DNA of 64,000 nucleotides from Phyllobates terribilis (GCF_046119375.1 NW_027362762.1:839108001-839172000); one strand, 5' to 3'; positions 17,717 through 61,497 are shown, counted from the stretch's first letter. Notes: generated by a model not told the origin, from the letters alone. Translations and numbers: made by a program.

Positions 17717-18142
17717 TTTTACTGCTGCTGGGGTTGTCAGGAGCACTTGGTATGGTCCGTCATACAATGGTTCTAGTCAGTGTTTCCGAACATGCTTCTT
17801 CACATATATATAATCTCCAGGTTTGAGGGTATGACAACCTTCTGCATCAGCTGGATCTGGAATAGAAGATGATACTAATGCATGGGTGTTAGTTAGTGCT
17901 TTGGCAAGCTGAATCACATATTGAACAACATGATCTGTTTCTTCTGATAATTGTTGAGGGGTAAATCTAGCTATAGCTGGTTGTGACCCAAATAATATCT
18001 CGTAGGGTGACAGTTTGTGTTTCCCTATGGGGGTGGTGCGTATGTGATACAGTGCAATGGGAAGGAGCTCAGGCCACTGGGCCGTAGTCTCCTGCATCAT
18101 TTTGGTTAATTGCCTTTTCAGTGTGCCATTCAATCTCTCCAC
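17717..18142 (-). pseudogene. pol: ERV integrase, 3' part
   Basis: VERLNGTLKRQL..SPYEILFG..KPGDYIYVK..GPYQVLLTTP, with one in-frame stop. Confidence 0.9.
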
Positions 18143-18643
18143 TAGTGTTGAGCCACCCCCGTAGTGTTCGAGTTCGGTTCGGTTCGTCGAACACCCGTGT
18201 GTTCGCCGAACTGTTCGTCGAACTGTTCGTCGAACACCTTCGAACACCATTAAAACCAATGGCAGGCAAACAAAAACACATAGAAACACATAGAAAACAC
18301 CTTCAAAGGTGTCCAAAAGCTGACAAACTGCTCAGAAGACACAACTAACACATGGAAAAGTGACAAGTACATATAGTCATGCGAAAAGAAAAGAGGTGGA
18401 GGAGTAAAAGGAGGGGGAGACACAGATATAGGCATGTCATGCCCTTCTAAAATCCAAAAAGTGAGAAGCCGACACGTTCAGTCCGCTCCTGCCCGTGCCA
18501 CCTCCGCGTCGCCGGGTTTGTGCCAGAGCCGCGGTGAACCCTGACGGCCAGCCCCCCTCTCCCAATACTGGTGCCTGTCCGCTGGTGGGTCGAGCGAGCC
18601 CCCCTGTGGTGGAGGCAGCTCTAAGCTTTTTAATTTAAATTGT

Positions 18644-18913
18644 CTCTCTAATTTGAATGAATACACTTTAAATCCATTTACAAGGATCTATTGGAGGGCA
18701 AGTCTCATGCCAGCAGCCGCGTAATTCCAGCTCCAGTAGCGTCCACTAAAGCTGCTGCAGTTAAAAAGCTTTTATAAGGATCGAGCTCAGCTGTCCACCG
18801 CAAGGCATCCTACTGCCAGTCCCAGCCCCTATGCCTTGGGGTGCCTCCTGATGCTCTTCACTGAATATCCGGTGGTCCCGAAGCATTTCCTTTGAAAAAA
18901 TTAAGTGTCCAAA
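18644..18913 (+). pseudogene. Diverged 18S rRNA gene fragment inside hAT copy 1
   Basis: ACTTTAAATCC..TTGGAGGGCAAGTCT..TGCCAGCAGCCGCG-TAATTCCAGCTCCA..GCTGCAGTTAAAAAGCT..GATGCTCTT..CCCGAAGC..TTTGAAAAAATTA is collinear with vertebrate 18S rRNA as I recall it (helix-18 region into the next expansion segment). Confidence 0.9.
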
Positions 18914-19027
18914 CTACAGGTGGTGTAGCTTGCTTAACAGCCGGGATAATCCGCTGACTAGCAGACACTGCTACTAGGCACAAAGTATTTCCTGGGCTAG
19001 ATGCAGTTAAAAATTTGTAATTAGATA

Positions 19028-20849
19028 CTCTCGTTGGATGCTGAGAAAGCATTCCATAGAGTCTCCTGGCACGCCATATATGATTCTCTTAAAAAGCTTG
19101 GGGTAGGTGTCTAGGGGACCCTTTTATAGCCAAAATCACGGCCCTGTATCGCAATACGTCACCTAGGCTGAAGATAAATGGAACTGTAGCACCCTGAGGG
19201 CTCGGTTGCTACAGAGGTATTGAACCTCACCCAGAGGTGTGATATCTCACTCTCAGGTAAGGATGTAGTGTGGATCAGGACCCGACACCTGCATGCATTA
19301 CACCACATTGCCGTGGGGCAGGGCGACCAATATGCCCCTGAGATGGGCACGACAATCCCTGTCCCTGGCTGGAGTGGGGGGAGGGAACACTGAGGAAGGG
19401 GAACCCTGTAGTGCAGGAGCAGGGAGGAAGCAGTTCCTGGGTGCATTGAGAAGGGAGTATAAAAGGTGGGCACCATCTTATTTCAGTGCAGAGAAGTCTG
19501 AGCAGAAGTGGCAGGGAGCAGGGGCTCTGCATGAGCTCTGCTCCGGAGGCGGGCCTAGTAACAGAGGCCCAGGCCTGGAAGAGGGAGAAGGAAGGAAGAG
19601 GAGCGGAGAAGGCTCCAGGAACGAGGAACGAAGGGATCCCAGGGATGCGGACGGGCGAGTCGCCACCGCACGCCCGAATCCACCTGCGTGGAGGGGTCAG
19701 GCCAAAGGGGGAGACCGGTCCCCGAAACTAGTGGAGGCAGGAAACGACCCTCAGCTAGAAACAGGAGGCTGTGACATTTTATGTGGCGCAGCCCCTCGCT
19801 ACACCCGCTAGGAAGGCACCACATAGGGTCAGGGAAACTGGCGCCAAGTTTACCAAGAGGAGGCCCGAGGCAGCCGGACAGAAGGGTTGGTAAGAAAGGC
19901 CAGACAAATGACACACAAAGGGGGTCCTGTGAAGCGCTCCAAAGTTATCTGGGAGTTGTCTGAGCCCCTCACCTGGTGAGCACAGTACGACTTGGGCAGC
20001 CGTTACCTGCAGACGTGGTCTGGATAATAAGAACTGTGAGTAAAGGCCCTGGACTGCATCACTGACTCCGTGTCGTTACTGCTGCTGCCCTGCACCATCA
20101 CCCCCATCCTCCACATACACTGCCCTGAGGCTATACTCCTCCCGTGGGGAGTTATGCTACGCTCTGCTGCACCCACAACACCAGCCTCAGGGGTCTGCCC
20201 TGGAGCGGCGGTTCACTCTGACCACAATCCACGGGTGGCATAGTCGGACATTTAAACATCAAAACCACATAAATAGTTCCGCCACTGGTTTGACCGCCCT
20301 GAGCCACGGAACCGGGTCGCCGCCACGGAGACTACAACCACCAGCATCCACCAAAAAGGGTCCGGCTCCGGGTGTCCCAAGGCCCAGGGGGCGCGTCAGA
20401 ACATTTTCATCACCTTTCACAATCACCAATGGGACAAGGCAGGGATGTTCTCTGTCCCCTCTCTTATACATCCTAGTGACGGAGCACCTGCTCTCATCAA
20501 TTCGCCATAACCCCAATATTAGGTGGATTGAGGTGGGAGGCACCGAGTACAAGTGCTCTCTATTTGCTGATGATGTCCTAGTATATATCACTCAATCACA
20601 TATATCCATCCATGCTGTTATGGCTGAAATAGATCACTTTGTTACATGGTCAAATTTTAAAATCAATGCAGCGAAGTCTGAGGCCCTTGATGTCTCCCTC
20701 CCCAAGTCCATATAGGATTCCATCCAGTCCAACTTTCCCTTTGCCTGGCCCTCACAGGGTATCAAATACTTAGGAATTCCTATTCATAGAGACCTCTCCC
20801 ATCTATGTTATCTTAATTTTGGGCCCTTTATTGAACAACTCCATACAGA
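19028..20849 (+). pseudogene. L1/Tx1-type RT fragment, split by a solo LTR
   Basis: LSLDAEKAFHRVSW..ALYRNTSPRLKING|TFSSPFTITNGTRQGCSLSPLLY..LFADD..IKYLGI. The frame is continuous once the LTR and one TSD copy are removed. Confidence 0.9.
19185..20398 (+). mobile_element. Gypsy-type solo LTR
   Basis: TGTAGCACCC..GGCCCAGGGGGCGCGTCA, 4-bp TSD GAAC (19181-19184 and 20399-20402), TATAAAA at ~19458. Termini resemble the LTRs of the element at 45873-53695. Confidence 0.9.
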
Positions 20850-22405
20850 CCACGGTTGGCAAGTTAGAACTGTAAGATTCACTACGTGAACCACTGGTGT
20901 TTTGTGGAAAAGCACATGTACACTGTGTTCCAAATTATTATGCAAAAAGTTTTTAGGAGTGATAAGGGAAGAATTTGTTTGTTTGTCAGTTAAACTCATT
21001 GATGGTGATGTGTGTCAGGGCTCTTTATATCACTGTAAGCAATTGCAGACACCTCTGCTAATTAGTTTGGTAGGTGTGTCCAATGAAAGGCAAGACTACT
21101 TAAGAAGGCTGTCTCACATTATTAAGCAGCCTACATTTTCTGCCAAAATGGGAAAGAAAAAGGATGTGTCGGCTGCTGAGAAGCAACAAATTGTGGAGTG
21201 TTTAGGTCAAGGCATGACTACAATCAACATTGTGCGATGATCAGGATGTAGTGTCTTGGCAATCAAGAAGTATGTAGCTGATTCACAGTACACACGTGTG
21301 CGTGCTGATAAGGGCAAATTGAGGACGCTTTCCTACAGGCAATTATGTCTGGTTGAAAGAGCAGCGGCAAAAAAGCCTTGTCATAGCAGCAGACAAGTTT
21401 TTGAAGCTGCTGGTGCCTCCAACGTCCCCCGAACAACAAGATGCAGGGTCCTTCAGAGGTTTGCAGCTGTGCATACGCCATCCTGTCGACCTCCTCTATC
21501 CACTTCACACAAGCAGAAACGGCTCCAGTGGGCCAAACATTACATGAAGACTGATTTCAAAACAGTTTTGTTCACGGATGAGTGCCGTGCAGCGCTCGAT
21601 GGTCCAGATGGATGGAGTGGAGGATGGCTGGTTGATGGACACCCCACGCAAACACGGCTACAGCGCCAACAAGGAGGAGGTGGAGTAATGTTTTGGGCTG
21701 GAATCATGGGGAGAGAGATTGTCGGTCCCTTTAGGATCCCTGAAGGCGCTAAAGATGAACTCCTTAATGTATGTGGATTTTCTCAAACAGCACTTCCTGC
21801 CATGGTTCAAGAAGAAGAACCGTGTATTTCACAGCAAGATCATTTTTTTGCATGATAATGCACCATCTCATGCTGCACATAAAACATCTGCATCTCTGGC
21901 TGATATGGGCATAAAAGGTGACAAACTTATGGTGTGATCCCCATGCTCCCCTGACCTCTACCCCATTCAGAACCTTTGGAGCATCATTAAAAGGAGTGTC
22001 TATGATGGCGGGAGGCAGTTCACATCTAAGCAACAGCTCTGGGAGGGTATTCTGTCCTCATGCAAAACAATTGAAGCAGAAACCATCCAAAACCTGACAA
22101 ATTCAATGGACGAGAGAGTTCAGAAGCTCCTTTCGAACAAGGGGTCCTATGTGAAAATGTAACATCACCTAGAATAAATTTTTGAGTTGAAAACTGTTTG
22201 ATTTCAGTTTCTAACAACCTGCTAATGCTTATAATTTCAAAAATGACCATTTTTTTGGTCTTTATTAAAATGAAAAGGTTGATCGAAAAGTTTGGGGGAT
22301 CTAAGAGTGTGGCAACCCAGTAGTCATGATTACTTCGAATTCTGACAATATGAGGGTCATGCTGCAGGTAGTGCAGCAAGAAGGCACTTATGTGTCTTGC
22401 GCATC
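20850..22405 (-). pseudogene. Relic of an older related hAT transposase in two pieces (20850-20920 and ~22294-22405), with a Tc1 between them
   Basis: The pieces are diverged homologues of 23183-23253 and ~23343-23451 (WVATLLDP; LHYLQHDPHIVRIR). Confidence 0.8.
20921..22281 (+). mobile_element. Tc1-type transposon, right TIR lost
   Basis: TA then CACTGTGTTCCAAATTATTATGC. Frameshifted transposase MGKKKDVS..VLFTDEC..FLHDNAPSH..DLYPIQNLW. Confidence 0.88.
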
Positions 22406-22409
22406 TCGG

Positions 22410-22685
22410 AGCCCCAAAATTATTTTCCGGGCTAGATGCAGCTAAAAATTATTATTAATTTTAAATCTGGTGAAGCTTTAGTATAGATGTCCTAATAGGA
22501 TCAGTGCTGCACACTGCTACAAAGCCCAAATTATTTTCCAGTCAAGATACAGATAAACATGATTAGTAATTTTAAATCTGGTGGAGCTTATTATAGATGG
22601 CCTAATAGAATCAGTGCTGCACACTGCTACAAAGCCCAAATTATTTTCCAGCCAAGATACAGATAAACATGATTAGTAATTTGAA
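22410..22685 (+). repeat. About 2.5 diverged monomers related to the ~110-bp internal satellite
   Basis: CACACTGCTACAAAGCCCAAATTATTTT..AGATRCAG repeats with a ~111-bp period. Confidence 0.7.
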
Positions 22686-22730
22686 AGCTTAAAATGGTTG
22701 GTAGGGTGATTTTAACCAATCATCAAGCTT

Positions 22731-25700
22731 TTACTCTCCCCAGGATGACACAGGGGTAGAAAAGTCGTTTCGGATCCATGATTTGTTCATCTTTATGAAC
22801 GTGAGTCTGTCTACGTTATCAGTGGAGAGCCGCGTGCGCTTATCTGTCAGCACACCACCAGCAGCGCTGAACACACGTTCAGACAGAACGCTGGCTGCGG
22901 GGCATGACAAGATCTCCAAGGCGTAAGTGGCTAGCTCCGGCCATTTATCCAGATTGGAAGCCCAAAAAGAGCAAGGGTCCAGTGACACAGTCATGGCTTC
23001 AATGTTTACTTGGAGATACTCCTGTACCATCGTCTCTAGACGTTGACTATGTGTCAGACTTCTTGTCTCCTGTGGCCTTGCAAAGGATGGGCTAAAAAAG
23101 TGGTGAAATGATTCCGCAAAATTGATGTTACCAGCAGATACTGTGGTTCTGTTACGGTTTGAGTGCTGAACACTTGACGGTCCCACGGTTGGCAAGTTGG
23201 AACTGTGAGATTCACTACGTGCACCACTGGTATTTTGTGGAAAAGCACATGTAAGATTCTGCAACAGTCTCTGCTGATACTCCTGCATGCGTGCATCCCT
23301 TTCTATGGCAGGAATAATTTCTGCAAATTTACTTTTGTACCGGGGATCTAACAGTGTGGCAACCCAGTAGTCAGGATTATTTCTAATTCTCACAATTCGA
23401 GGGTCATGTTGCAGGTAGTGCAGCAAGAAGGCACTTATGTGTGTTGCGCATCCAGGAGCACCAAGTCCCTGTTGTGTTGGTGGCGAGGTAACAATCATGC
23501 TTCCTTCCTCTGTCCTCTCCCCCCAACCTCGCACAACAGAAATGTGATCAAGGTCTCCCTCATCTGATGAGTCTTCCATCAGTTCGTCCTCCACTTCTTC
23601 TTGGGCTCCTGCACCTTCCTCACTAGTTTGGCTGCTACCATGCGCCCTGGTAAAACCATCTCCCCCACCCTCACATGCCTGCCGCCTTGGTGCTGCCGAC
23701 CGTCTGGACCTTGCAGATGTTAGCCCTTCCGCATACAGCTCCTCCTCCTCTACTTCCTCCACCTCCTCTTGTGCCACCACCTGACTCCGAATTCTGTTTA
23801 ACATGTGCTCCAGCATGTAAATCACCGGAATAGTCATGCTGATAATGGCATCGTCAGCACTAAACATCTTCGTCGCCATTTCAAAACTGTGCAGAAGGGT
23901 GCATAGGTCCCTGATCTGAGACCACTCCTCCAGCGTGATTTGCCCCACCTCTGGATCTCGTTGGCCCAGGCTATACATCAGAACGTATTGCACCAGGGCT
24001 TGTCGGTGCTGCCACAGTCGCTGCAACATGTGCAGAGTTGAATTCCACCGGGTAGGCACATCGCATTTTAGCCGGTGAAGTGGCAGGCCCAACGACTTCT
24101 GTAGAGATGTAAGTCGCTGAGCTGCGGGATGCGAACGGCGGAAGTGAGCACACAGCGACCGTGCCCTCTGCAGAAGGCCATCTAGTCTGGGATAGTGGGC
24201 TAAAAATTGCTGGACAACCAGGTTCAACACGTGAGCCATACAAGGCACGTGTGTGACATTGCCCCGGCGAAGGGCCGCACCCAGGTTTGCAGCATTGTCG
24301 CACACGGCCTTCCCTTTCAGGTCCAGTGGAGACAACCATTCATGAAATTGGTTCTCCAGAGCTGACCACAACTCCTCAGCTGTGTGACTCACATTTCCCA
24401 GACATTTCAATGTAAAAACCGCCTGATGATGTTGAGCCCTACTGCCAGCATAGTAAGGAGGTGTGCAGGATCCATTCTGCGCAGTTATAAAGCTTGTGGC
24501 ATGACCAGACAGGCTTTGGGTTCAGGTGGAAGACCGAGGGGAGGTTGAGGAGGCAGAAGCAGTGGAGGAACTTTGACATAAAGAGGATTGACGCACAACT
24601 CGTGGGGACGGCAAGACTTGGACAGCAGCCCCTTGTCCTGCTGTCACCATAGTTACCCAGTGCCCATTCAGCGACATGTAACGCCCCTGTCCATGCCTAC
24701 TCGTCCAAGTGTCTGTGGTGAAATGCACCCTGTCACACACAGAGTTTCTCAAAGAAGCGGTGATGTTGTGTGCGACATGCTGGTGGAGCGCAGGCACACC
24801 TTTCTTTGAGAAGTAGTGCCGACTGGGCATCTGGTACTGGGGCACTGCGACGGACATAAGGTCTCGAAAATCCTCTGTGTCCACCAGGCGGAAAGGCAGC
24901 ATTTCTGTAGCCAAGAGCTTGCAGATGGTGAAATTCAACCTCTTAGCTTTCTCATGGCTAGGAGGAAATGGTCTTTTACTTGTCCACATCTGAGGGACCG
25001 AGGGCTGGCTATTGTGCTTAGATGGGGTTGATAAGGGTGTCCCCGGCAAACTGCCGGTCTGTGAGGAATATGCAGGCGGACATGTTAGGTTGCCTTGATC
25101 CAAAGGTGGTGCTATCGATGTCGGACAGCGCTCAACACCAGCTGGTGTTACCACCTCCAAAGAAAATGATGACCTGCCAATCACGCTGGCTGTTGCGGGT
25201 AAAGAGGTGGCAGGTCTGCGCCCCAAAACAGGTGTGACTGCTGTCCCCCCAGTCACAGAGGATGAAGAGGCCGCGGATGCACAAGATATGGCAGACGGTG
25301 GTTGGCCCGGCCGGCTAGGCCGCATTGTAGCACACTGAGCTTCCCACTGCAACTTATGCTTCATGTCCATGTGCCGGTTCATGCATGAAGTACTCAAACT
25401 ATGTATTTTTTGGCCTCTACTTAGCTTTTGCAGACAAATGTTACAGATAACATGAGCTGGGTCATCTTTATCGATCTGAAAAAATGCCTAGGCTATGCAA
25501 GGCTTAGCACCCATGCGACCTGAAGAGCCACCACGACTTGTGGTGAGAGGCAGAGTTGTGTTTGAGGATGCAGTTGTTGACGTGCTTCCAGTACTACGTC
25601 TCTGTCCAGGAAGGTGCAACCTGACCTCGTCGTCACTAGCATCTTCCTCCACCTCCTCTGCTGACCTCATCTCTTGGCTGACTGTGGGTTGACAGTAAGT

Positions 25701-26429
25701 GGGATCTCCAACCTCATCATCATCACCCTGTGCGTTATCTCACCCGTCGTCCTCAGAGCCAACCTGTTCCTGCCCTGACGAAAAACTAAAGTTGTCGCTC
25801 CAATCAGGTATTTGAGTCTTATCATCGTCTTCCTCATTGTCTCCACCAACAGGAGTTACAGTTTGGGAATGAGGGTCTACATTATGGTCAGAACCTTCTG
25901 CGTCTGGTCCTGGATCCGACTCATAAAGATTCTGGGCATCAGTGCAGATCATTTCCTCGTCTGGATTCACAGAAGCGCTGGAGTCGACCTCTGATTCCCA
26001 GGCTATAGTATGAGTAAACAGCTCTGCAGACTCAACCATCTGTTCTACCTCATACTCAGACGGGCAGCTGGAGATTTGGGAGCTGTGAGGAAGCAAGTGC
26101 GATTGGGGTGACACCTTTGAGGACTGGAGTATTTGTGATGTTGAAGTTGATGTGGAGGAGAGCCCACTTAAAGGAGCACTTGATATCCATTGAAGCACCT
26201 GCTGTTTTTGTGCCTCATCTGGAATTTGTAGCGATTGGCGTGGCCGTAAGAAAGGGATCTTATCACATTGTCCGCTAAAAGAAGTAGACATTTTAGTTTG
26301 GCTGGAAGATGGTCTTTCTTCTGCAGATGTTACTGTTGCTTTAACACCTACCCCACGGACACAACCTTTTTTCCCCTTCCCAACACGCCTATTCACTTTT
26401 CCACCAGCAGCAGGCCTTTTTCCACTCAT
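22731..26429 (-). pseudogene. hAT (Ac-like) transposase, 1232 codons in one frame with two premature TGA stops
   Basis: BED finger (WAFF..C..C..H..KH), TTDTWTS, VCDNAAN, CMAH, RWNS, SERVFS and the C-terminal dimerisation region. ORFs 25740-26429, 24522-25397 and 22731-24410 share one frame, and copy 2 has TGT and TGC at the two stop positions. Confidence 0.95.
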
Positions 26430-26545
26430 TTTGGTGGTTAACTAATTCACAACTCTGGAGTTGTTTGCACAAAAAAACAATGGATGGGAACCGAGCAGAG
26501 CTGAGTGGCCAAACTGTGGTATTAGGCCAAAACTATTGGCTGGGT

Positions 26546-29500
26546 TAGATGCAGAAAAAAATTATATTCAATTTGCAACCTGATGGAGGTCAGTATAGAT
26601 GGACTAATAGAACAAGTCCCACACAAAGCTAGAAGCCCAAATATTTTTTCAGAGGTAGATGCAGAAAAATTTTTTATTCAGTTTGCAACCTGATGGAGGT
26701 CTGTATAGATGGATTAATAGAACAAGTCACACACACAGCTGCAAGCCCAATATTTTTTCAGAGGTAGATGCAGAAAAAAAATATATTCAGTTTGCAACCT
26801 GATGGAGGTCAGTATAGATGGACTAATAGAGAAAGTCCCACACACTGCTAGAAGGCCAAATATTTTTTCAGAGCTTGATGCAGACAAAAAATTATTTTGA
26901 ATTTGCAACCTGATGGAGGTCAGTATAGGTGGACTAATAGAACAAGTCCCACACACTGCTAGAAGGCCAAATATTTTTTCAGAGCTAGATGCAGAAAAAA
27001 ATTATATTCAGTTTGCAACCTGATGGAGGTCTGTATAGATGGATTAATAGAACAAGTCCCACACACAGCTAGAAGCCCAAATATTTTTTCAGAGGTAGAT
27101 GCAGATAAAAATTATTTTTAATTTGCAACCTGATGGAGGTCAGTATAGATGGACTAATAGAGAAAGTCCCACACACTGCTAGAAGACCAAATATTTTTTC
27201 AGAGATAGATGCAGATAAAAATTATTTTTAATTTGCAACCTGATGTAGGTCAGTATAGATGGACTAATAGAGAAAGTCCCACACACTGCTAGAAGGCCAA
27301 ATATTTTTTTCAGAGCTAGATGCAGATAAAAATTATATTCAATTTGCAACCTGATGGAGGTCAGTATAGATGGACTAATAGAACAAGTCCCACACACAGC
27401 TAGAAGCCCAAATATTTTTTCAGAGGTACTGTAGATGCAGATAAAAATTATTTTTAATTTGCAACCTGATGGAGGTCAGTATAGATGGACTAATAGAACA
27501 AGTCCCACACACAGCTAGAAGCCCAATATTTTTTCAGAGGTAGATGCAGAAAAAAATATATTCAGTTTGCAACCTGATGGAGGTCAGTATAGATGGAGTA
27601 ATAGAACAAGTCCCACACACAGCTAGAAGCCCAAATATTTTTTCAGAGGCAGATGCAGATAAAAATTATTTTTAATTTGCAACCTGATGGAGGTCAGTAT
27701 AGATGGACTAATAGAGAAAGTCCCACACACTGCTAGAAGGCCAAATATTTTTTCAGAGCTAGATGCAGATAAAAATTATATTCAATTTGCAACCTGATGG
27801 AAGTCAGTATAGATGGACTAATAGAACAAGTCCCACACACAGCTAGAAGCCCAAATATTTTTTCAGAGGTACTGTAGATGCAGATAAAAATTATTTTTAA
27901 TTTGCAACCTGATGGAGGTCAGTATAGATGGACTAATACAACAAGTCCCACACACAGCTAGAAGCCCAATATTTTTTCAGAGGTAGATGCAGAAAAAAAT
28001 ATATTCAGTTTGCAACCTGAAGGAGGTCAGTATAGATGGAGTAATAGAACGAGTCCCACACACAGCTAGAAGCCCAAATATTTTTTCAGAGGTAGATGCA
28101 GATAAAAATTATTTTTAATTTGCAACCTGATGGAGGTCAGTATAGATGGACTAATAGAGAAAGTCCCTCACACTGCTAGAAGGCCAAATATTTTTTCAGA
28201 GCTAGATGCAGATAAAAATTATATTCAATTTGCAACCTGATGGAGGTCAGTATAGATGGACTAATAGAGAAAGTCCCACACACTGCTGGAAGGCCAAATA
28301 TTTTTTCAGAGCTAGATGCAGATAAAAATTATATTCAATTTGCAACCTGATGGAGGTCAGTATAGATGGACTAATAGAACAAGTCCCACACACAGCTAGA
28401 AGCCCAAATATTTTTTCAGAGGTACTGTAGATGCAGATAAAAATTATTTTTAATTTGCAACCTGATGGAGGTCAGTATAGATGGACTAATAGAGAAAGTC
28501 CCACACACTGCTAGAAGGCCAAATATTTTTTCAGAACTAGATGCAGATAAAAATTATTTTTAATTTGCAACCTGATGGAGGTCAGTATAGATGGACTAAT
28601 AGAGAAAGTCCCACACACTGCTAGAAGGCCAAATATTTTTTCAGAGCTAGATGCAGATAAAAATTATATTCAATTTGCAACCTGATGGAGGTCAGTATAG
28701 ATGGACTAATAGAACAAGTCCCACACACAGCTAGAAGCCCAAATATTTTTTCAGAGGTACTGTAGATGCAGATAAAAATTATTTTTAATTTGCAACCTGA
28801 TGGAGGTCAGTATAGATGGACTAATACAACAAGTCCCACACACAGCTAGAAGCCCAATATTTTTTCAGAGGTAGATGCAGAAAAAAATATATTCAGTTTG
28901 CAACCTGATGGAGGTCAGTATAGATGGAGTAATAGAACAAGTCCCACACACAGCTAGAAGCCCAAATATTTTTTCAGAGGTAGATGCAGATTAAAATTAT
29001 TTTTAATTTGCAACCTGATGGAGGTCAGTATAGATGGACTAATGGAGAAAGTCCCACACACTGCTAGAAGGCCAAATATTTTTTCAGAGCTAGATGCAGA
29101 TAAAAATTATATTCAATTTGCAACCTGATGGAGGTCAGTATAGATGGACTAATAGAGAAAGTCCCACACACTGCTAGAAGGCCAAATATTTTTTCAGAGC
29201 TAGATGCAGATAAAAATTATATTCAATTTGCAACCTGATGGAGGTCAGTATAGATGGACTAATAGAACAAGTCCCACACTCAGCTAGAAGCCCAAATATT
29301 TTTTCAGAGGTACTGTAGATGCAGATAAAAATTATTTTTAATTTGCAACCTGATGGAGGTCAGTATAGATGGACTAATAGAGAAAGTCCCACACTCTGCT
29401 AGAAGGCCAAATATTTTTTCAGAGCTAGATGCAGATAAAAATTACTTTTAATTTGCAACCTGATGGAGGTCAGTATAGATGGACTAATAGAGAAAGTCCC

Positions 29501-32500
29501 ACACACTGCTAGAAGGCCAAATATTTTTTCAGAGCCAGATGCAGATAAAAATTATATTCAATTTGCAACCTGATGGAGGTCAGTATAGATGGACTAATAG
29601 AACAAGTCCCACACACAGCTAGAAGCCCAAATATTTTTTCAGAGGTACTGTAGATGCAGATAAAAATTATATTCAATTTGCAACCTGATGGAGGTCAGTA
29701 TAGATGGACTAATAGAACAAGTCCCACACACAGCTAGAAGCCCAAATATTTTTTCAGAGGTACTGTAGATACAGATAAAAATCATTTTTAATTTGCAACC
29801 TGATGGACGTCAGTATAGATGGACTAATAGAGAAAGTCCCACACACTGCTAGAAGGCCAAATATTTTTTCAGAGCTAGATGCAGAAAAAAATTATATTCA
29901 GTTTGCAACCTGATGGAGGTCAGTATAGATGGACTAATAGAGAAAGTCCCACACACTGCTAGAAGGCCACATATTTTTTCTGAGGTAGATGCAGAAAAAA
30001 ATATATTCAGTTTGCAACCTGATGGAGGTCTGTATAGATGGATTAATAGAACAAGTCCCACACACAGCTAGAAGCCCAATATTTTTTCAGAGGTAGATGC
30101 AGAAAAAAATATATTCAGTTTGCAACCTGATGGAGGTCAGTATAGATGGACTAATACAACAAGTCCCACACACAGCTAGAAGCCCAATATTTTTTCAGAG
30201 GTAGATCCAGAAAAAAATATATTCAGTTTGCAACCTGATGGAGGTCTGTATAGATGGATTAATAGAACAAGTCCCACACACAGCTAGAAGCCCAATATTT
30301 TTTCAGAGGTAGATGCAGAAAAAAATATATTCAGTTTGCAACCTGATGGAGGTCAGTATAGATGGACTAATACAACAAGTCCCACACACAGCTAGAAGCC
30401 CAATATTTTTTCAGAGGTAGATGCAGAAAAAAATATATTCAGTTTGCAACCTGATGGAGGTCAGTATAGATGGAGTAATAGAACAAGTCCCACACACAGC
30501 TAGAAGCCCAAATATTTTTTCAGAGGTAGATGCAGATTAAAATTATTTTTAATTTGCAACCTGATGGAGGTCAGTATAGATGGACTAATAGAGAAAGTCC
30601 CACACACTGCTAGAAGGCCAAATATTTTTTCAGAGCTAGATGCAGATAAAAATTATATTCAATTTGCAACCTGATGGAGGTCAGTATAGATGGACTAATA
30701 GAGAAAGTCCCACACACTGCTAGAAGGCCAAATATTTTTTCAGAGCTAGATGCAGATAAAAATTATATTCAATTTGCAACCTGATGGAAGTCAGTATAGA
30801 TGGACTAATAGAACAAGTCCCACACACAGCTAGAAGCCCAAATATTTTTTCAGAGGTACTGTAGATGCAGATAAAAATTATTTTTAATTTGCAACCTGAT
30901 GGAGGTCAGTATAGATGGACTAATACAACAATTCCCACACACAGCTAGAAGCCCAATATTTTTTCAGAGGTAGATGCAGAAAAAAATATATTCAGTTTGC
31001 AACCTGAAGGAGGTCAGTATAGATGGAGTAATAGAACAAGTCCCACACACAGCTAGAAGCCCAAATATTTTTTCAGAGGTAGATGCAGATAAAAATTATT
31101 TTTAATTTGCAACCTGATGGAGGTCAGTATAGATGGACTAATAGAGAAAGTCCCTCACACTGCTAGAAGGCCAAATATTTTTTCAGAGCTAGATGCAGAT
31201 AAAAATTATATTCAATTTGCAACCTGATGGAGGTCAGTATAGATGGACTAATAGAGAAAGTCCCACACACTGCTGGAAGGCCAAATATTTTTTCAGAGCT
31301 AGATGCAGATAAAAATTATATTCAATTTGCAACCTGATGGAGGTCAGTATAGATGGACTAATAGAACAAGTCCCACACACAGCTAGAAGCCCAAATATTT
31401 TTTCAGAGGTACTGTAGATGCAGATAAAAATTATTTTTAATTTGCAACCTGATGGAGGTCAGTATAGATTGACTAATAGAGAAAGTCCCACACACTGCTA
31501 GAAGGCCAAATATTTTTTCAGAACTAGATGCAGATAAAAATTATTTTTAATTTGCAACCTGATGGAGGTCAGTATAGATGGACTAATAGAGAAAGTCCCA
31601 CACACTGCTAGAAGGCCAAATATTTTTTCAGAGCTAGATGCAGATAAAAATTATATTCAATTTGCAACCTGATGGAGGTCAGTATAGATGGACTAATAGA
31701 ACAAGTCCCACACACAGCTAGAAGCCCAAATATTTTTTCAGAGGTACTGTAGATGCAGATAAAAATTATTTTTAATTTGCAACCTGATGGAGGTCAGTAT
31801 AGATGGACTAATACAACAAGTCCCACACACAGCTAGAAGCCCAATATTTTTTCAGAGGTAGATGCAGAAAAAAATATATTCAGTTTGCAACCTGATGGAG
31901 GTCAGTATAGATGGAGTAATAGAACAAGTCCCACACACAGCTAGAAGCCCAAATATTTTTTCAGAGGTAGATGCAGATTAAAATTATTTTTAATTTGCAA
32001 CCTGATGGAGGTCAGTATAGATGGACTAATGGAGAAAGTCCCACACACTGCTAGAAGGCCAAATATTTTTTCAGAGCTAGATGCAGATAAAAATTATATT
32101 CAATTTGCAACCTGATGAAGGTCAGTATAGATGGACTAATAGAGAAAGTCCCACACACTGCTAGAAGGCCAAATATTTTTTCAGAGCTAGATGCAGATAA
32201 AAATTATATTCAATTTGCAACCTGATGGAGGTCAGTATAGATGGACTAATAGAACAAGTCCCACACTCAGCTAGAAGCCCAAATATTTTTTCAGAGGTAC
32301 TGTAGATGCAGATAAAAATTATTTTTAATTTGCAACCTGATGGAGGTCAGTATAGATGGACTAATAGAGAAAGTCCCACACACTGCTAGAAGGCCAAATA
32401 TTTTTTCAGAGCTAGATGCAGATAAAAATTACTTTTAATTTGCAACCTGATGGAGGTCAGTATAGATGGACTAATAGAGAAAGTCCCACACACTGCTAGA

Positions 32501-35500
32501 AGGCCAAATATTTTTTCAGAGCCAGATGCAGATAAAAATTATATTCAATTTGCAACCTGATGGAGGTCAGTATAGATGGACTAATAGAACAAGTCCCACA
32601 CACAGCTAGAAGCCCAAATATTTTTTCAGAGGTACTGTAGATGCAGATAAAAATTATATTCAATTTGCAACCTGATGGAGGTCAGTATAGATGGACTAAT
32701 AGAACAAGTCCCACACACAGCTAGAAGCCCAAATATTTTTTCAGAGGTACTGTAGATACAGATAAAAATCATTTTTAATTTGCAACCTGATGGACATCAG
32801 TATAGATGGACTAATAGAGAAAGTCCCACACACTGCTAGAAGGCCAAATATTTTTTCAGAGCTAGATGCAGAAAAAAATTATATTCAGTTTGCAACCTGA
32901 TGGAGGTCAGTATAGATGGACTAATAGAGAAAGTCCCACACACTGCTAGAAGGCCACATATTTTTTCTGAGGTAGATGCAGAAAAAAATATATTCAGTTT
33001 GCAACCTGATGGAGGTCTGTATAGATGGATTAATAGAACAAGTCCCACACACAGCTAGAAGCCCAATATTTTTTCAGAGGTAGATGCAGAAAAAAATATA
33101 TTCAGTTTGCAACCTGATGGAGGTCAGTATAGATGGACTAATACAACAAGTCCCACACACAGCTAGAAGCCCAATATTTTTTCAGAGGTAGATCCAGAAA
33201 AAAATATATTCAGTTTGCAACCTGATGGAGGTCTGTATAGATGGATTAATAGAACAAGTCCCACACACAGCTAGAAGCCCAATATTTTTTCAGAGGTAGA
33301 TGCAGAAAAAAATATATTCAGTTTGCAACCTGATGGAGGTCAGTATAGATGGACTAATACAACAAGTCCCACACACAGCTAGAAGCCCAATATTTTTTCA
33401 GAGGTAGATGCAGAAAAAAATATATTCAGTTTGCAACCTGATGGAGGTCAGTATAGATGGAGTAATAGAACAAGTCCCACACACAGCTAGAAGCCCAAAT
33501 ATTTTTTCAGAGGTAGATGCAGATTAAAATTATTTTTAATTTGCAACCTGATGGAGGTCAGTATAGATGGACTAATAGAGAAAGTCCCACACACTGCTAG
33601 AAGGCCAAATATTTTTTCAGAGCTAGATGCAGATAAAAATTATATTCAATTTGCAACCTGATGGAGGTCAGTATAGATGGACTAATAGAGAAAGTCCCAC
33701 ACACTGCTAGAAGGCCAAATATTTTTTCAGAGCTAGATGCAGATAAAAATTATATTCAATTTGCAACCTGATGGAGGTCAGTATAGATGGACTAATAGAA
33801 CAAGTCCCACACACAGCTAGAAGCCCAAATATTTTTTCAGAGGTACTGTAGATGCAGATAAAAATTATTTTTAATTTGCAACCTGATGGAGGTCAGTATA
33901 GATGGACTAATAGAGAAAGTCCCACACACTGCTAGAAGGCCAAATATTTTTTCAGAGCTAGATGCAGATAAAAATTATTTTTAATTTTCAACCTGATGGA
34001 GGTCAGTATAGATGGACTAATAGAGAAAGTCCCACACACTGCTAGAAGGCCAAATATTTTTTCAGAGCCAGATGCAGATAAAAATTATATTCAATTTGCA
34101 ACCTGATGGAGGTCAGTATAGATGGACTAATAGAACAAGTCCCCCACACAGCTAGAAGCCCAAATATTTTTTCAGAGGTACTGTAGATGCAGATAAAAAT
34201 TATTTTTAATTTGCAACCTGCTGGAGGTCAGTATAGATGGACTAATACAACAAGTCCCACACACAGCTAGAAGCCCAATACTTTTTCAGAGGTAGATGCA
34301 GAAAAAAATATATTCAGTTTGCAACCTGATGGAGGTCAGTATAGATGGAGTAATAGAACAAGTCCCACACACAGCTAGAAGCCCAAATATTTTTTCAGAG
34401 GTAGATGCAGATAAAAATTATTTTTAATTTGCAACCTGATGGAGGTCAGTATAGATGCACTAATAGAGAAAGTCCCACACACTGCTAGAAGGCCAAATAT
34501 TTTTTCAGAGCTAGATGCAGATAAAAATTATATTCAATTTGCAACCTGATGGAGGTCAGTATAGATGGACTAATAGAGAAAGTCCCACACACTGCTAGAA
34601 GGCCAAATATTTTTTCAGAGCTAGATGCAGATAAAAATTATATTCAATTTGCAACCTGATGGAGGTCAGTATAGATGGACTAATAGAACAAGTCCCACAC
34701 ACAGCTAGAAGCCCAAATATTTTTTCAGAGGTACTGTAGATACAGATAAAAATCATTTTTAATTTGCAACCTGATGGAGGTCAGTATAGATGGACTAATA
34801 GAGAAAGTCCCACACACTGCTAGAAGGCCAAATATTTTTTCAGAGCTAGATGCAGAAAAAAATTATATTCAGTTCGCAACCTGATGGAGGTCAGTATAGA
34901 TGGACTAATAGAGAAAGTCCCACACACTGCTAGAAGGCCACATATTTTTTCAGAGGTAGATGCAGAAAAAAATATATTCAGTTTGCAACCTGATGGAGGT
35001 CTGTATAGATGGATTAATAGAACAAGTCCCACACACAGCTAGAAGCCCAATATTTTTTCAGAGGTAGATGCAGAAAAAATATATTCAGTTTGCAACCTGA
35101 TGGAGGTCAGTATAGATGGACTAATACAACAAGTCCCACACACAGCTAGAAGCCCAATATTTTTTCAGAGGTAGATCCAGAAAAAAATATATTCAGTTTG
35201 CAACCTGATGGAGGTCTGTATGAACGGATTAATAGAACAAGTCCCACACACAGCTAGAAGCCCAATATTTTTTCAGAGGTAGATGCAGAAAAAAATATAT
35301 TCAGTTTGCAACCTGATGGAGGTCAGTATAGATGGACTAATACAACAAGTCCCACACACAGCTAGAAGCCCAATATTTTTTCAGAGGTAGATGCAGAAAA
35401 AAATATATTCAGTTTGCAACCTGATGGAGGTCTGTATAGATGGATTAATAGAACAAGTCCCACACACAGCTAGAAGCCCGATATTTTTTCAGAGGTAGAT

Positions 35501-35670
35501 GCAGAAAAAAATATATTCAGTTTGCAACCTGATGGAGGTCAGTATAGATGGACTAATACAACAAGTCCCACACACAGCTAGAAGCCCAATATTTTTTCAG
35601 AGCTAGATGCAGAAAAAAATTATATTCAATTTGCAACCTGATGGAGGTCAGTATAGATGGACTAATAGAA
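26546..35670 (+). repeat. Tandem array of ~110-bp monomers (~82 units, 9125 bp) inside hAT copy 1
   Basis: Monomer TAGATGCAGAWAAAA..TTTGCAACCTGATGGAGGTCAGTATAGATGGACTAATAGARMAAGTCCCACACA..GCTAGAAG..AAATATTTTTTCAGAG. Period 110 measured at 28201 and 28311. Confidence 0.97.
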
Positions 35671-36587
35671 TGATGCTATGCCCAAAAGATTTTACTTCAC
35701 TAGGTGCAGTAAAAAAATTGGTATTCTATACACAGGTGGTATATCTTGCAACACAGATAGGCTACTCCACTGACTAACACACTCTGCAATAGGCCAAAAA
35801 GGATTAGCTTTGCTAGATTCAGCCAAATGCTGTGAAAAAAACTTGCACAGCACTGGCACAGACCTGCCTGGCAAAAACTGATAGGAACTGATGTAACCTA
35901 GTCCTGAAAAGGACTCCAATTACAATTAGTCTTTACTCCCACAATCTATCTATTTAAGAGCACAGACCTGCCTGATAAAAGTCGTAGGAAATGCTGTAAC
36001 CTAGTCCTTAAAAGGACTGCAATCACAACTATTCCCTACTCCCAAGCTATCTGTAGATTTGTGCGAAAATTGGCTTGAAATTAACAAGGTATAGCGCACA
36101 CAGCAACAGCGGTGCCGTCTAACACGCAGCTGCAGCAGTGAGAAAATGGTGGCGACGGGGAAAATGGCTTGGTCTTATAGGGCAAGGACATGTGACATAC
36201 ACTGCCAATGACACATGCCCTTGCTTGTGTGAAAAAAAGCACTTCGCTCCGTGTGTGCGCTGCTGATAGGCTGACAGATTGCACCTCCCCACTGTAAATG
36301 CGGGAAAGAGAAAAAAAAAATGGAGATCTTCATTGTTCCTGCAGAGATCCATCCCCTGCCCCTCCCCCCACCCCGCTGTACACTCAAACTGCGTATTAAC
36401 ATTAATTTTCATCATTACTGAGAAAAAATCCAGTTATGATTTTGGTGCACGAACAGTTATCGAACATAACCTCGAACAGCCGAATTTTTCTCAAATTGTT
36501 CGTGTTCGCCGAACGGCTCGAACACCGCCCAAAACAGCTCGAATTTGAGATTGGCGAACAGTTCGAGTAGAACAACGTTCATCTCTA

Positions 36588-52692: not shown

Positions 52693-52697
52693 AAAGT

Positions 52698-53695: not shown

Positions 53696-55949
53696 CATAT
53701 ATTACTGTACTAGGTGTACATACTAAATATTTAATAAATCATGATATTGTTAAATTTGTTTCCATTTTTCATCATTTGAATCAATAACATGTCTTCTTCT
53801 TGGTGCTGCAATTTTAATGTCGAAAATTGTTTATGGCTATATGTAAATACCATATGGTAACCAGTGGAAATAAAACACTGCACTGACTGACTTTATAAGC
53901 TTTTTAAAAAGTAAGAGTAGTCCATAAATTATCCCTTTTAGTAGCAGATGCTCGCCTTGCTGCTGTTTATACACAGGCAATGTGCAAGGAAGAAGTCATG
54001 GCATACATACAAGTAGTGGTCCAAAAATCATCCCTGATTGTGGAGCAGCAACAGGCTTGTTGTTTGTTAAATGAAAAAGCTATAGATTTTTAACAAACCT
54101 TCCAAAAGGTATCCCTTTTGTTGGAGCAGCCATAGATTTGCTGTTTAGAAAGAGAAAAGCAATGGCTTTTTAAACAAAATATGCAAAAAAGTATTCTCTT
54201 TTTTGGTAGGGTTCATATACTCTGTACAAAGTAGTGTTCTAATCAGCAATACAGTATAGCCATAGCATACAGGTATGCTATGCAGTGGTAGTGGCATCAA
54301 CCACACAGTATATAATTAGATGGGAGAGGCAAGGAGATGTCTGACTATGTAGGGCCACCACTGGCAGCCTTGACAGCAATACAGTATAGCTATAGACCAC
54401 AATGGACAGACAGGAAATTTGTGGCTCTCTATAGACAGAGGCAATGACAGCAACTGAAAAGTGGAGAATGTGATGGGATAGGCATAGAGATGTCCAGCTA
54501 TATAGGGCCAACAGTGGCAGACCAAGCAGCAGTTGTGCAGTATAAATATAACATGATTAACAGGCAGGTATCTGGTTAGGCATGGAGAATGAGCTCTGAC
54601 AGCATCAGAACAGGGTTGAGCACAATCAACAGAAAAGCCGAGTTGTAAAGTGCATCAGGTTGGTGCAGTGGCAGATAAAACATTTGGTCCATCATGTCAT
54701 AGACACTGTAATCTCTTCTGCTGACTAGGCTAGTTGTTGTAACCCTAGAACTGGCACAGGCAGGGGAGTGTTGGCTCTGCGGGGTAGTGAAAATGGGGTT
54801 CTGGTCTGTCTTGAATTGATAAGTCCATGTCCCCCTCCATTTCTACCCTCTTCCCCCTCCTCCACATCCTGCACCAAGTAACATTGACCTTGAAGGTCCC
54901 CAACAGCCACAGGACAGAATTGAATATGTATAAATTGCCTACTTCCTCTATTCATTGTTGCATCTTTGTGAGTGTTTTTTTCCAACATAAGTAGCATGAT
55001 AGCATTGGTGATGCCACAGTTCTCCCTACTGACAAGCTTATTAGAGAGCTCAGTAGATGAAACATGTCCCTCAACAGCTGCTAATGGTGGATTTCAAAAT
55101 AATCTAAGCTCCAGTTTGCCTGCTGAATGATATAATCAGTCACTGTTTTACTTATGCAGCATTGAAATCCAGCATATTATTATGGCATTGCAGATCAGGC
55201 AGCACTCAGGCAGGAGGTCATGTTTCTGTAAAGCCTGAAGGGTGTGCTTCTCCACATAAGAATTGTTGATATGAGCAGGCACATCATTGTCAGTTGCAGC
55301 TAATGGGAAGCCATCCAGGGTGATATTTTCTGCTTAATGCAGGTGAGCAACTCATCTGCTTTTTGTCTTTTTTCTGCTATGCACACAAGCTATAAAACTG
55401 CTTTGCAGTGCTTTATATTGCAAGAATGAAAATAATTATGGTGGGGAGTAGTGTTGAGCCACCCCCGTAGTGTTCGAGTTCGGTTCGGTTCGTCGAACAC
55501 CCGTGTGTTCGCCGAACTGTTCGTCGAACTGTTCGTCGAACACCTTCGAACACCGTTAAAACCAATGGCAGGCAAACAAAAACACATAGAAACACATAGA
55601 AAACACCTTCAAAGGTGTCCAAAAGCTGACAAACTGCTCAGAAGACACAACTAACACAAGGAAAAGTGACAAGTACATATAGTCATGCGAAAAGAAAAGA
55701 GGTGGAGGAGTAAAAGGAGGGGGAGACACAGATATAGGCATGTCATGCCCTTCTAAAATCCAAAAAGTGAGAAGCCGAGACGGCCAGTCCGCTCCTGCCC
55801 GTGCCACCTCCGTGTCGCCGGGTTTGTGCCAGAGCCGCGGTGAACCCTGACGGCCAGCCCCCCTCTCCCAATACTGGTGCCTGTCCGCTGGTGGGTCGAG
55901 AGAGCCCCCCTGTGGTGGAGGCAGCTCTAAGCTTTTTAATTTAAATTGT

Positions 55950-56219
55950 CCCTCTAATTTGAATGAATACACTTTAAATCCATTTACAAGGATCTATTGG
56001 AGGGCAAGTCTCATGCCAGCAGCCGCGTAATTCCAGCTCCAGTAGCGTCCACTAAAGCTGCTGCAGTTAAAAAGCTTTTATAAGGATCGAGCTCGGCTGT
56101 CCACCGCAAGGCATCCTAGTGCCAGTCCCAGCCCCTATGCCTTGGGGTGCCTCCTGATGCTCTTCACTAAGTATCCCGTGGTCCCGAAGCATTTCCTTTG
56201 AAAAAATTAAGTGTCCAAA
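55950..56219 (+). pseudogene. Diverged 18S rRNA fragment inside hAT copy 2
   Basis: Same sequence and same offset from the TIR as 18644-18913. Confidence 0.9.
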
Positions 56220-56333
56220 CTACAGGTGGTGTAGCTTGCTTAACAGCCGGGATAATCCGCTGACTAGCAGACACTGCTACTAGGCACAAAGTATTTCCTG
56301 GGCTAGATACAGTTAAAAATTTGTAAGTAGATA

Positions 56334-61381: not shown

Positions 61382-61497
61382 TTTGGTGGTTAACTAATTC
61401 ACAACTCTGGAGTTGTTTGCACAAAAAAACAATGGATGGTAACCGAGCAGAGCTGAGTGGCCAAACTGTGGTATTAGGCCAAAACTATTGGCTGGGT

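What the first reader, a model, noticed from the sequence alone, without database searches (positions are those of the whole stretch)
26546..35670. Satellite DNA expanding inside a mobile element: ~82 versus ~8.6 monomers
The same ~110-bp monomer between identical flanks spans 9125 bp in copy 1 and 947 bp in copy 2, although the copies are otherwise ~98-99% identical. The arrays have copy-specific variants (GTACTGTAG insertion and AGAGAAAG in copy 1; AGACCAAG and AAATGAAG in copy 2). This is a snapshot of rapid array turnover and of satellite seeding by a transposon.
Basis: partly seen in the sequence, partly recalled or inferred. Interest (0 to 1): 0.8.

Follow-up and report, generated by a model that had tools for sequence, protein, structure and literature searches.

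The report
Expanding tandem array inside hAT transposon
Two decayed copies of a frog hAT DNA transposon carry the same internal 110-bp tandem repeat, about 83 units in one and 9 in the other; it is a clean example of an already known way that repeat arrays grow inside mobile elements.

Summary
A 110-bp repeat spans 26546-35670 (82 monomers plus a 67-bp partial) and 61498-62444 (8 plus the same partial), between identical junctions.

Both arrays lie inside copies of an Ac-like hAT transposon: 18143-36587 and 55449-63360. Each copy has its own 8-bp target-site duplication, imperfect terminal inverted repeats, CGAAC/GTTCG subterminal motifs and a BED/DDE/hATC transposase on the minus strand. The host is probably a dendrobatoid frog. 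Outside the arrays the copies are 97.9-99.2% identical.

Neither copy is intact. Copy 1 has three nonsense changes. Copy 2 lost 2.26 kb, including the dimerisation domain.

The long array is built from nested duplications: a 335-bp trimer, an 8-mer, and a 27-monomer unit of 2877 bp repeated at 99.69% identity. At the level of divergence between the two copies, its 82 monomers collapse to about 14 lineages. Each array has spread its own derived variants. So most of the growth came after the two copies split, most likely by in-register unequal exchange or repair slippage.

"Satellite seeding" is not shown: the window holds no free-standing array. Assembly error could not be tested. Transposon-internal arrays of variable length are well documented (Tetris, Xenopus MITEs, CACTA, Ogre), so this is a new member of a known kind.

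The parts
18143..36587 (-). hAT transposon copy 1 (18,445 bp). The transposase reads on the minus strand.
   Evidence: Homology to copy 2 starts and ends exactly here. The ends read TAGTGTTGAGC... and ...ATCTCTA.
18135..18142 (.). Target-site duplication of copy 1, CTCTCCAC. The second copy is at 36588-36595.
   Evidence: Direct reading of both junctions.
26546..35670 (+). Array 1: 82 monomers of 107-115 bp plus a 67-bp partial monomer. It begins 116 bp upstream of the transposase ATG, in the 5' region of the element.
   Evidence: AT-rich (GC 36.5%), CpG observed/expected 0.017. No stop-free stretch longer than 98 aa.
26546..27316 (+). Monomers A01-A07 at the ORF-proximal edge: the unhomogenised part of array 1.
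   Evidence: The nearest relative inside the array differs at 2-7 positions here, against 0-1 for most later monomers. The T-run signature of A02 recurs only in B02.
27650..30526 (+). Super-repeat unit 1 (monomers A11-A36).
   Evidence: 99.69% identical to 30637-33513: 9 substitutions and no indels over 2877 bp. An offset of 27 monomers gives 22 identical monomer pairs.
30637..33513 (+). Super-repeat unit 2 (monomers A38-A63).
33514..35603 (+). Partial, rearranged third unit (monomers A64-A82).
   Evidence: Its segments are 98.7-99.7% identical to their counterparts in units 1 and 2, and some monomers are missing.
22731..26429 (-). Transposase gene of copy 1. It is interrupted by three nonsense substitutions (changed bases at 25740, 25489 and 24522) but keeps the C-terminal hAT dimerisation domain.
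   Evidence: Codon-wise comparison with copy 2. PF05699 at E 1.5e-15. Hermes match at E 5e-19, including the SER.FS motif.
22414..22699 (+). Diverged mini-array of the same repeat family (2.6 units, about 75% identical to the main monomer), immediately 3' of the transposase stop codon. Present only in copy 1.
   Evidence: nhmmer E 1e-22 and 1e-23.
20921..23182 (.). The 2262-bp segment present in copy 1 and missing from copy 2. It holds a Tc1-like fragment, a 123-bp duplicate of an ORF segment (22295-22417), the mini-array and the transposase C-terminus.
20850..20920 (+). 71-bp direct repeat, 94% identical to 23183-23253. The two repeats bracket the segment deleted in copy 2, which keeps a single copy at 58153-58223.
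35702..35798 (+). Degenerate monomer relic in the distal flank of the array. The same relic is at 62476-62572 in copy 2.
   Evidence: Local alignment score 34 against a maximum of 28 in shuffles. nhmmer E 0.6, so the evidence is weak.
35856..36044 (+). Older 103-bp x1.8 tandem duplication in the 5' subterminal region. The same feature is at 62630-62818 in copy 2.
55449..63360 (-). hAT transposon copy 2 (7,912 bp), an internally deleted derivative. Its target-site duplication GTGGGGAG is at 55441-55448 and 63361-63368.
61498..62444 (+). Array 2: 8 monomers plus the same 67-bp partial monomer.
   Evidence: B05 and B08 are identical and B03 and B06 differ at 2 positions, which points to a recent 3-monomer duplication.
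58106..61381 (-). Open 1091-aa reading frame of copy 2. It holds the BED zinc finger and the catalytic core but lacks the dimerisation domain, because the deletion runs it into a new stop codon.
   Evidence: PF02892 at E 3e-10. Hermes match at E 5.5e-7. The alignment to frog ZBED6-like P0005 ends about 150 residues before that protein's C-terminus.

Best explanation
The 110-bp repeat is a non-coding tandem repeat native to the 5' region (between the 5' end and the transposase start codon) of an Ac-type hAT DNA transposon of a dendrobatoid frog.

The window holds two independent, now defective insertions of that transposon. After their lineages split (about 1.5% divergence), each internal array changed copy number on its own through in-register misalignment between monomers. 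The likely routes are unequal sister-chromatid exchange, replication slippage, or slipped strand annealing during double-strand-break repair.

In copy 1 this happened in nested rounds: trimer (335 bp), then 8-mer, then a 27-monomer unit of about 3 kb copied roughly 2.7 times. That took an array of roughly 10-15 monomers to 82. Copy 2 stayed small, with one recent 3-monomer duplication.

Shown: the element's identity and boundaries, the independence of the insertions, the nested duplication structure, the relative ages, and within-array homogenisation.

Inferred: the molecular mechanism, the short ancestral state, and that the growth occurred at this locus rather than in a donor copy.
For: Identity as a hAT transposon:
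- 8-bp target-site duplications that differ between the copies, with unrelated flanks.
- Terminal inverted repeats matching at 8 of 11 positions.
- CGAAC/GTTCG motifs: 12 in the first 100 bp, 8 in the last 140 bp, 3 elsewhere.
- BED finger, Hermes-like core and hATC domain.
- Frog ZBED4/6-like relatives. The closest fragments come from Ranitomeya (78-89%, over short fragments), Phyllobates (82%) and Anomaloglossus (71%).

Array history:
- Monomer type string with a 27-monomer period, giving 22 identical pairs at offset 27.
- Super-units 99.69% identical, trimers 97.6-98.5% identical, against 97.9-99.2% between the copies.
- At 2 or fewer differences, the 82 monomers fall into 14 clusters.
- Mean differences are 9.4 within array 1 and 5.3 within array 2, against 10.0 between them. 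Every array 2 monomer's nearest relative is another array 2 monomer.
- AGAGAAAG, +TACTG and AGACCAAG are each confined to one array and absent from the diverged mini-array monomers C1/C2. At alignment columns 69-70 both mini-array monomers read A then T. AGAACAAG keeps the A at column 69, while AGAGAAAG (G) and AGACCAAG (C) each depart from it.
- The edge monomers A01-A07 are not homogenised.

Native origin: the repeat family occurs at four places in the element, all in the same orientation and at different degrees of decay.
Against: - Only two copies are available, so the ancestral array length is an extrapolation.
- Gene conversion could mimic recent duplication.
- Clustering by number of differences is a crude clock.
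- The nonsense mutations and the nested Tc1-like fragment in copy 1 do not prove long residence at this site, because defective hAT copies can be moved in trans.
- No reads were available to verify the 9.1-kb array.
Confidence: 0.72

Rival explanations
1. The ancestral array was long and copy 2 contracted. Alternatively, the length difference was inherited from different donor copies, so nothing happened at these loci.
For: Copy 2 is demonstrably a deletion derivative: it lost 2.26 kb between 71-bp direct repeats. Its lineage therefore did undergo repeat-mediated loss. Unequal exchange produces contractions as often as expansions.
Against: - At least 46 of the 82 monomers in array 1 belong to duplications at about 99-99.7% identity, younger than the split between the copies.
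- The main variant of array 2, AGACCAAG, is absent from all 82 monomers of array 1, so array 2 is not a subset of array 1.
- The inheritance-from-donor version is not excluded.
Confidence: 0.15
2. Assembly artefact: the 9.1-kb array is over-expanded, or the 0.95-kb array is collapsed.
For: Tandem arrays with roughly 3-kb near-identical units are a classic source of assembler error. No reads could be consulted.
Against: - The two 2877-bp units differ by 9 substitutions and no indels, even though each monomer carries A7 and T6 homopolymer runs. That looks like accurate consensus of real paralogous units, not a looped read path.
- The third unit has a different, rearranged composition.
- Ordinary long reads would span a 947-bp array, and modern high-accuracy reads would span 9 kb. 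This point rests on general knowledge.
Confidence: 0.07
3. The transposon captured a pre-existing host satellite rather than generating the repeat itself.
For: The element has captured host DNA at least once: an 18S rRNA fragment sits in its 3' arm in both copies. Capture of satellite arrays by CACTA elements has been proposed (PMC8978399).
Against: - The repeat family occurs at four separate sites in the element, on both sides of the ORF, all in one orientation and at about 75% to over 90% identity. That fits long residence and internal duplication better than a single capture.
- No copy of the monomer lies outside the two elements in the window.
Confidence: 0.12
4. The array is a functional module of the transposon, for example extra transposase-binding sites, a promoter or enhancer, or a small-RNA source. 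Its length would then be under selection.
For: - It sits directly upstream of the transposase start codon.
- Internal repeats of foldback elements such as Galileo carry transposase-binding sites (PMC4079207).
- A degraded relative of this hAT at window 1-2036 also has a tandem repeat next to its ORF.
Against: - The subterminal CGAAC/GTTCG motif is absent from the monomers, which have almost no CpG.
- Both carriers are dead copies whose ORFs diverge as if neutral: 29 nonsynonymous, 5 synonymous and 3 nonsense differences. Selection on this particular array is therefore unlikely.
Confidence: 0.08

Closest known systems
Tetris foldback transposon and the TIR-220 satellite of Drosophila virilis (Dias et al. 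2014, PMC4079207)
   Same: A DNA transposon with internal tandem repeats whose number differs between copies. Unequal crossing-over was proposed as the cause, and kb-size arrays formed inside the element.
   Different: In Tetris the repeats lie inside long terminal inverted repeats of a non-autonomous foldback element, and free-standing satellite arrays were demonstrated by FISH. Here the carrier is an autonomous-type hAT, the array lies between the 5' end and the ORF, and no free-standing array has been seen.
Xenopus MITE-borne tandem repeats (Hikosaka and Kawahara 2004; Scalvenzi and Pollet 2014, both as summarised in PMC12628747) and Xenopus minisatellites derived from SINE/tRNA-V, CR1 and Kolobok (PMC10794172)
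   Same: Frog genomes, with tandem repeats riding on or derived from transposable elements that expand in some copies and not others.
   Different: Those carriers are MITEs, SINEs or Kolobok elements with mostly shorter units (for example 52 bp). The expansion was tied to subtelomeric recombination, and the chromosomal position of this window is unknown.
CACTA element of Chenopodium quinoa with a 5.55-kb internal array of 171-bp units (PMC8978399)
   Same: A full-length cut-and-paste transposon of about 16-18 kb carrying a multi-kb satellite-like array next to its coding region, together with captured host gene fragments.
   Different: A different superfamily and kingdom. The array lies on the 3' side, and the authors favoured capture of an existing satellite.
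Tandem repeats in the untranslated regions of Ogre/Ty3 retrotransposons as a source of plant satellites (Vondrak et al. 2020, PMC7004042, listed)
   Same: Short arrays inside elements alongside expanded arrays of the same monomer.
   Different: Those are retrotransposons, and the long arrays were shown genome-wide from nanopore reads.

Membership tests
hAT superfamily of DNA transposons | 8-bp target-site duplication | tested here: met
   CTCTCCAC flanks copy 1 and GTGGGGAG flanks copy 2.
hAT superfamily of DNA transposons | Short terminal inverted repeats | tested here: met
   TAGTGTTGAGC against TAGAGATTAGC (reverse complement of the other end) match at 8 of 11 positions, so the repeats are imperfect.
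hAT superfamily of DNA transposons | Transposase with a BED zinc finger, an RNase-H-like DDE core resembling Hermes, and a C-terminal hAT dimerisation domain | tested here: met
   PF02892 at E 3e-10 in copy 2. Hermes core aligned, including the CDNAAN / C.AH.LNL / PTRWNST blocks. PF05699 at E 1.5e-15 and Hermes at E 5e-19 with SER.FS in copy 1. No single copy carries all parts intact.
hAT superfamily, Ac-type clade | Target-site pattern nTnnnnAn (recalled from Arensburger et al. 2011, not re-read here) | tested here: inconclusive
   Both duplications fit T at position 2 and A at position 7, but there are only two sites. Relatives are annotated ZBED4/6-like.
Transposon-borne internal tandem repeats (Tetris, MITE, CACTA or Ogre type) | Array lies wholly inside intact element boundaries and its copy number varies among copies | tested here: met
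   Both arrays lie within the terminal repeats and target-site duplications, at the same junctions, with 82.6 against 8.6 units.
Classical satellite DNA | Head-to-tail monomers with higher-order repeat structure | tested here: met
   Periods of 110 bp, 335 bp and 27 monomers.
Classical satellite DNA | Free-standing long arrays, independent of the mobile element | tested here: not met
   Within the window, every significant match to the monomer lies inside the two hAT copies. Genome-wide status could not be tested.
Classical satellite DNA | High genomic abundance and heterochromatic or centromeric location | not testable with these tools
   No access to the rest of the genome, to reads or to cytology. 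The metagenome scan found nothing.

The most novel reading that the evidence does not exclude
This hAT family is the birthplace of a genome-wide 110-bp satellite in a poison-frog lineage with a large genome, and copy 1 catches the step between a transposon-internal repeat and a free satellite. Array growth would be driven by a transposon-specific route: slipped repair of the double-strand breaks left by hAT excision.
Probability: 0.1. Interest if true: 0.55.

Novelty: new member of a known kind. Interest (0 to 1): 0.3.

Why it matters
It is a tidy, datable example of how a tandem array can grow about ten-fold inside one copy of a DNA transposon while a sister copy stays short. The order of the nested duplications can still be read from the sequence.

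If a genome-wide census showed free arrays of the same monomer, it would document a hAT-derived satellite in an amphibian. In two literature searches pairing hAT with satellite DNA I noticed no such case, and two reviews of transposon-derived satellites that I searched for the term (PMC9659126, PMC12628747) describe none.

As it stands it adds an example, not a principle. It also shows that kb-scale internal arrays contribute to the length variation of transposon copies in large frog genomes.

Tried and rejected
- **Segmental duplication instead of transposition:** rejected. Homology stops exactly at the terminal repeats, and each copy has its own 8-bp duplication.
- **Monomer derived from a structured RNA gene (5S, tRNA, snRNA):** no Rfam family matches the arrays. 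The only hits are the 18S fragment elsewhere in the element.
- **Coding array:** no open frame longer than 98 aa, and the periods are not multiples of 3.
- **Array of transposase-binding motifs:** the monomers lack the CGAAC/GTTCG subterminal motif.
- **Other copies or other species:**
  - Exact look-ups of six window ORFs found none in the protein collection.
  - Four look-ups of dendrobatoid relatives (P0014, P0011, P0016, P0038) returned gene tables but no DNA, because the files or genes were too large.
  - A scan of metagenome contigs for a conserved 24-mer of the monomer gave 0 hits.
  - Cross-species and genome-wide tests were therefore impossible.
- **Second end of the Tc1-like fragment:** none found within 3 mismatches.
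- **Pfam scan of frame translations of the flanks of copy 1:** I did not pursue it.
- **Literature:** no paper on dendrobatid satellite DNA describing this repeat was found.
Full report
**Observation**

Tandem Repeats Finder reports a 110-bp period at 26546-35670 (82.6 copies, 92% matches, also scored at period 335). It reports the same monomer at 61498-62443 (8.6 copies). Matching the consensus monomer back to the window places 83 hits in the first array and 9 in the second. The only other hits are two diverged units at 22433-22651. Both arrays begin at the same junction and end with the same 67-bp partial monomer followed by identical flank. The window contains no N.

**What carries the arrays**

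Self-comparison shows two homologous segments, 18143-36587 and 55449-63360, whose similarity stops abruptly at both ends.

- Copy 1 is bracketed by CTCTCCAC on both sides and copy 2 by GTGGGGAG. These are two independent insertions with 8-bp target-site duplications.
- The termini form an imperfect inverted repeat (TAGTGTTGAGC against TAGAGATTAGC, 8 of 11).
- The subterminal regions are packed with CGAAC/GTTCG motifs: 12 in the first 100 bp, 8 in the last 140 bp and 3 in the remaining 7.7 kb.

On the minus strand copy 2 has an open 1091-aa frame with a BED zinc finger and a core that aligns to the Hermes transposase. The corresponding frame in copy 1 ends in a hAT dimerisation domain (PF05699 at E 1.5e-15; Hermes at E 5e-19).

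The nearest database proteins are frog 'ZBED4/6-like' hAT transposases at 35-46% identity. Short gene-model fragments match at 78-89% in Ranitomeya imitator and 82% in Phyllobates terribilis. A 438-aa protein of Anomaloglossus baeobatrachus matches at 71% over 77% of the query. The element is therefore an Ac-like hAT transposon of a dendrobatoid frog. The exact species was not identified.

**State of the two copies**

Outside the arrays they are 97.9%, 98.9% and 99.2% identical in three blocks, with 102 substitutions in 7033 aligned bases. Neither is intact.

- Copy 1 has three nonsense substitutions, plus one 21-bp and one 3-bp in-frame indel relative to copy 2. The 37 ORF substitutions split into 29 nonsynonymous, 5 synonymous and 3 stops, which is neutral decay.
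- Copy 2 lacks 2262 bp (20921-23182 of copy 1). That segment contains the last roughly 150 codons with the dimerisation domain, the stop codon, a diverged mini-array of the 110-bp family, a 123-bp duplicate of an ORF segment and a Tc1-like fragment.
- In copy 1 the missing segment is bracketed by 71-bp direct repeats (94% identical), of which copy 2 keeps one. This is the footprint expected of repeat-mediated deletion, the way internally deleted hAT derivatives are known to arise (established knowledge, cited in PMC8978399 as Rubin and Levy).

**Anatomy of the arrays**

In the transposase orientation the array lies in the 5' region of the element, 116 bp upstream of the ATG. It is AT-rich (GC 36%) and almost free of CpG (observed/expected 0.017, against 0.53 for the rest of the element). 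It does not code and matches no Rfam family.

The monomer alignment and clustering give array 1 the type string abcdefg followed by blocks built from ffh (110+110+115 = 335 bp) and ffhij, ending in hkcejejj.

- A 27-monomer unit is repeated. Offset 27 gives 22 identical monomer pairs and the lowest mean difference.
- The two full units (27650-30526 and 30637-33513) differ by 9 substitutions and no indels in 2877 bp, or 99.69%.
- A third, rearranged partial unit is about 98.7-99.7% identical to its counterparts.
- The trimers inside a unit are 97.6-98.5% identical.
- The first seven monomers next to the ORF have no close relative in the array (2-7 differences), whereas later ones mostly have a partner at 0-1 differences.

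Array 2 also shows a recent 3-monomer duplication: B05 equals B08, and B03 and B06 differ at 2 positions.

**Independent evolution**

Every monomer of array 2 has its nearest relative within array 2. Mean differences are 9.4 within array 1, 5.3 within array 2 and 10.0 between them.

- AGAGAAAG (32), the 5-bp TACTG insertion (16) and ATACAACAAG (11) occur only in array 1.
- AGACCAAG (6) and AAATGAAG (2) occur only in array 2.
- I used the diverged mini-array units as an outgroup. At alignment columns 69-70 both units read A then T. AGAACAAG keeps the A at column 69, while AGAGAAAG (G) and AGACCAAG (C) each depart from it. By that column each array spread a different derived variant.
- Positional orthology survives only at the edges: the T-run signature in the second monomer, and the last partial monomer, which differs at 1 position.

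**Timing and direction**

The youngest duplication, at 0.31% divergence, is about five-fold younger than the split between the copies at 1.45%. Clustering monomers at 2 or fewer differences (about the divergence between copies for 110 bp) reduces array 1 from 82 monomers to 14 groups and array 2 from 8 to 4.

I therefore infer an ancestral array of roughly 10-15 units. Copy 1's lineage expanded it stepwise, and copy 2's kept it small. This is an extrapolation from two copies. Gene conversion and expansion in a donor copy before transposition are not excluded.

**Mechanism**

All duplications are in register with the monomer and nested (trimer, 8-mer, 27-mer). That is the signature of unequal exchange or slipped repair between misaligned repeats, the standard model for satellite growth (PMC9659126, PMC4079207). 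For a cut-and-paste element there is an added possibility: repair of excision breaks from the sister copy passes through the array and slips. The repeat-bracketed deletion in copy 2 shows that repeat-mediated rearrangement did act on this family. This last link is inference.

**Origin of the repeat**

Members of the 110-bp family occur at four sites in the element, all in the same orientation:
- the main array;
- a degenerate unit in its distal flank (35702-35798; weak);
- the mini-array just after the stop codon (22414-22699; E about 1e-23);
- a weak relic in the 3' arm (18901-19021; E 0.03).

This favours an old, element-borne repeat over a recent capture. Capture cannot be excluded, though, because the element did capture an 18S rRNA fragment.

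**Comparison with known cases**

Internal tandem repeats of variable number, and kb-scale arrays inside transposons, have been described for:
- Tetris in Drosophila (PMC4079207);
- Xenopus MITEs, and Xenopus SINE- and Kolobok-derived minisatellites (PMC12628747, PMC10794172);
- CACTA elements (PMC8978399);
- Ogre retrotransposons (PMC7004042).

In my two searches pairing hAT with satellite DNA I noticed no amphibian hAT example, and a search on Dendrobatidae and satellite DNA returned no paper describing this repeat. The two reviews I searched for the term contain no hAT case. The case is thus a new member of a known kind.

**Limits**

- No reads were available, so an assembly artefact is not tested. 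The substitution-only differences between super-units argue against it.
- No other copies or species could be retrieved.
- 'Satellite seeding' remains a hypothesis, because no free-standing array is seen in the window.

Noticed in passing
window 18590-18953 (core 18633-18736) and 55929-56048: Both hAT copies carry a diverged fragment of eukaryotic 18S rRNA, the conserved 530-loop region (Rfam RF01960, 57-70 bits, above the gathering score). This looks like host rDNA captured in the 3' arm of the transposon.
   Followed up: partly
window 45873-53695: Young Ty3/gypsy-type LTR retrotransposon on the minus strand. It has 998-bp LTRs at 99.6% identity (TG...CA), a 4-bp CATA duplication, an open 1418-aa pol (protease, RT, RNase H, integrase) and a 326-aa gag with a zinc knuckle.
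   Followed up: partly
window 16964-17767 (-) and 36971-38497 (-): Copy 1 sits between a reverse-transcriptase ORF (508 aa, RVT_1) and an ORF with a retroviral envelope-like segment (TLV_coat, E 6e-8). It may have inserted into an endogenous-retrovirus-like element. I did not analyse this further.
   Followed up: no
window 1-2036, 2145-2453 and 3330-3596: A heavily degraded relative of the same hAT lineage lies on the plus strand (about 70% nucleotide identity to the C-terminal region of copy 1, many stops). A 133-bp x2.3 tandem repeat starts about 110 bp after its ORF end, and a 43-bp x6 repeat lies further on. Tandem repeats next to the ORF may be a lineage habit.
   Followed up: partly
window 20921-~22290: Tc1/mariner-like fragment (TA|CACTGTG... 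end, HTH_Tnp_Tc3_2 in ORF 21256-21855) nested in the 3' part of copy 1. Only one terminal repeat was found.
   Followed up: partly
window 22295-22417 vs 23342-23464; 20850-20920 vs 23183-23253: Two pieces of the transposase coding region are duplicated (90% and 94% identity), in the same order and orientation, downstream of the stop codon of copy 1. I could not work out how this internal rearrangement arose.
   Followed up: partly
window 41027-41937: A cluster of 210-230-bp repeats in direct and inverted orientation (86-87% identity), possibly a foldback or MITE-like structure.
   Followed up: no
window 18143-36587 and 55449-63360: The two copies lie 37 kb apart in the same orientation. Their target duplications are near reverse complements (CTCTCCAC reversed is GTGGAGAG, against GTGGGGAG). 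This could reflect local hopping and a target preference, or chance.
   Followed up: no
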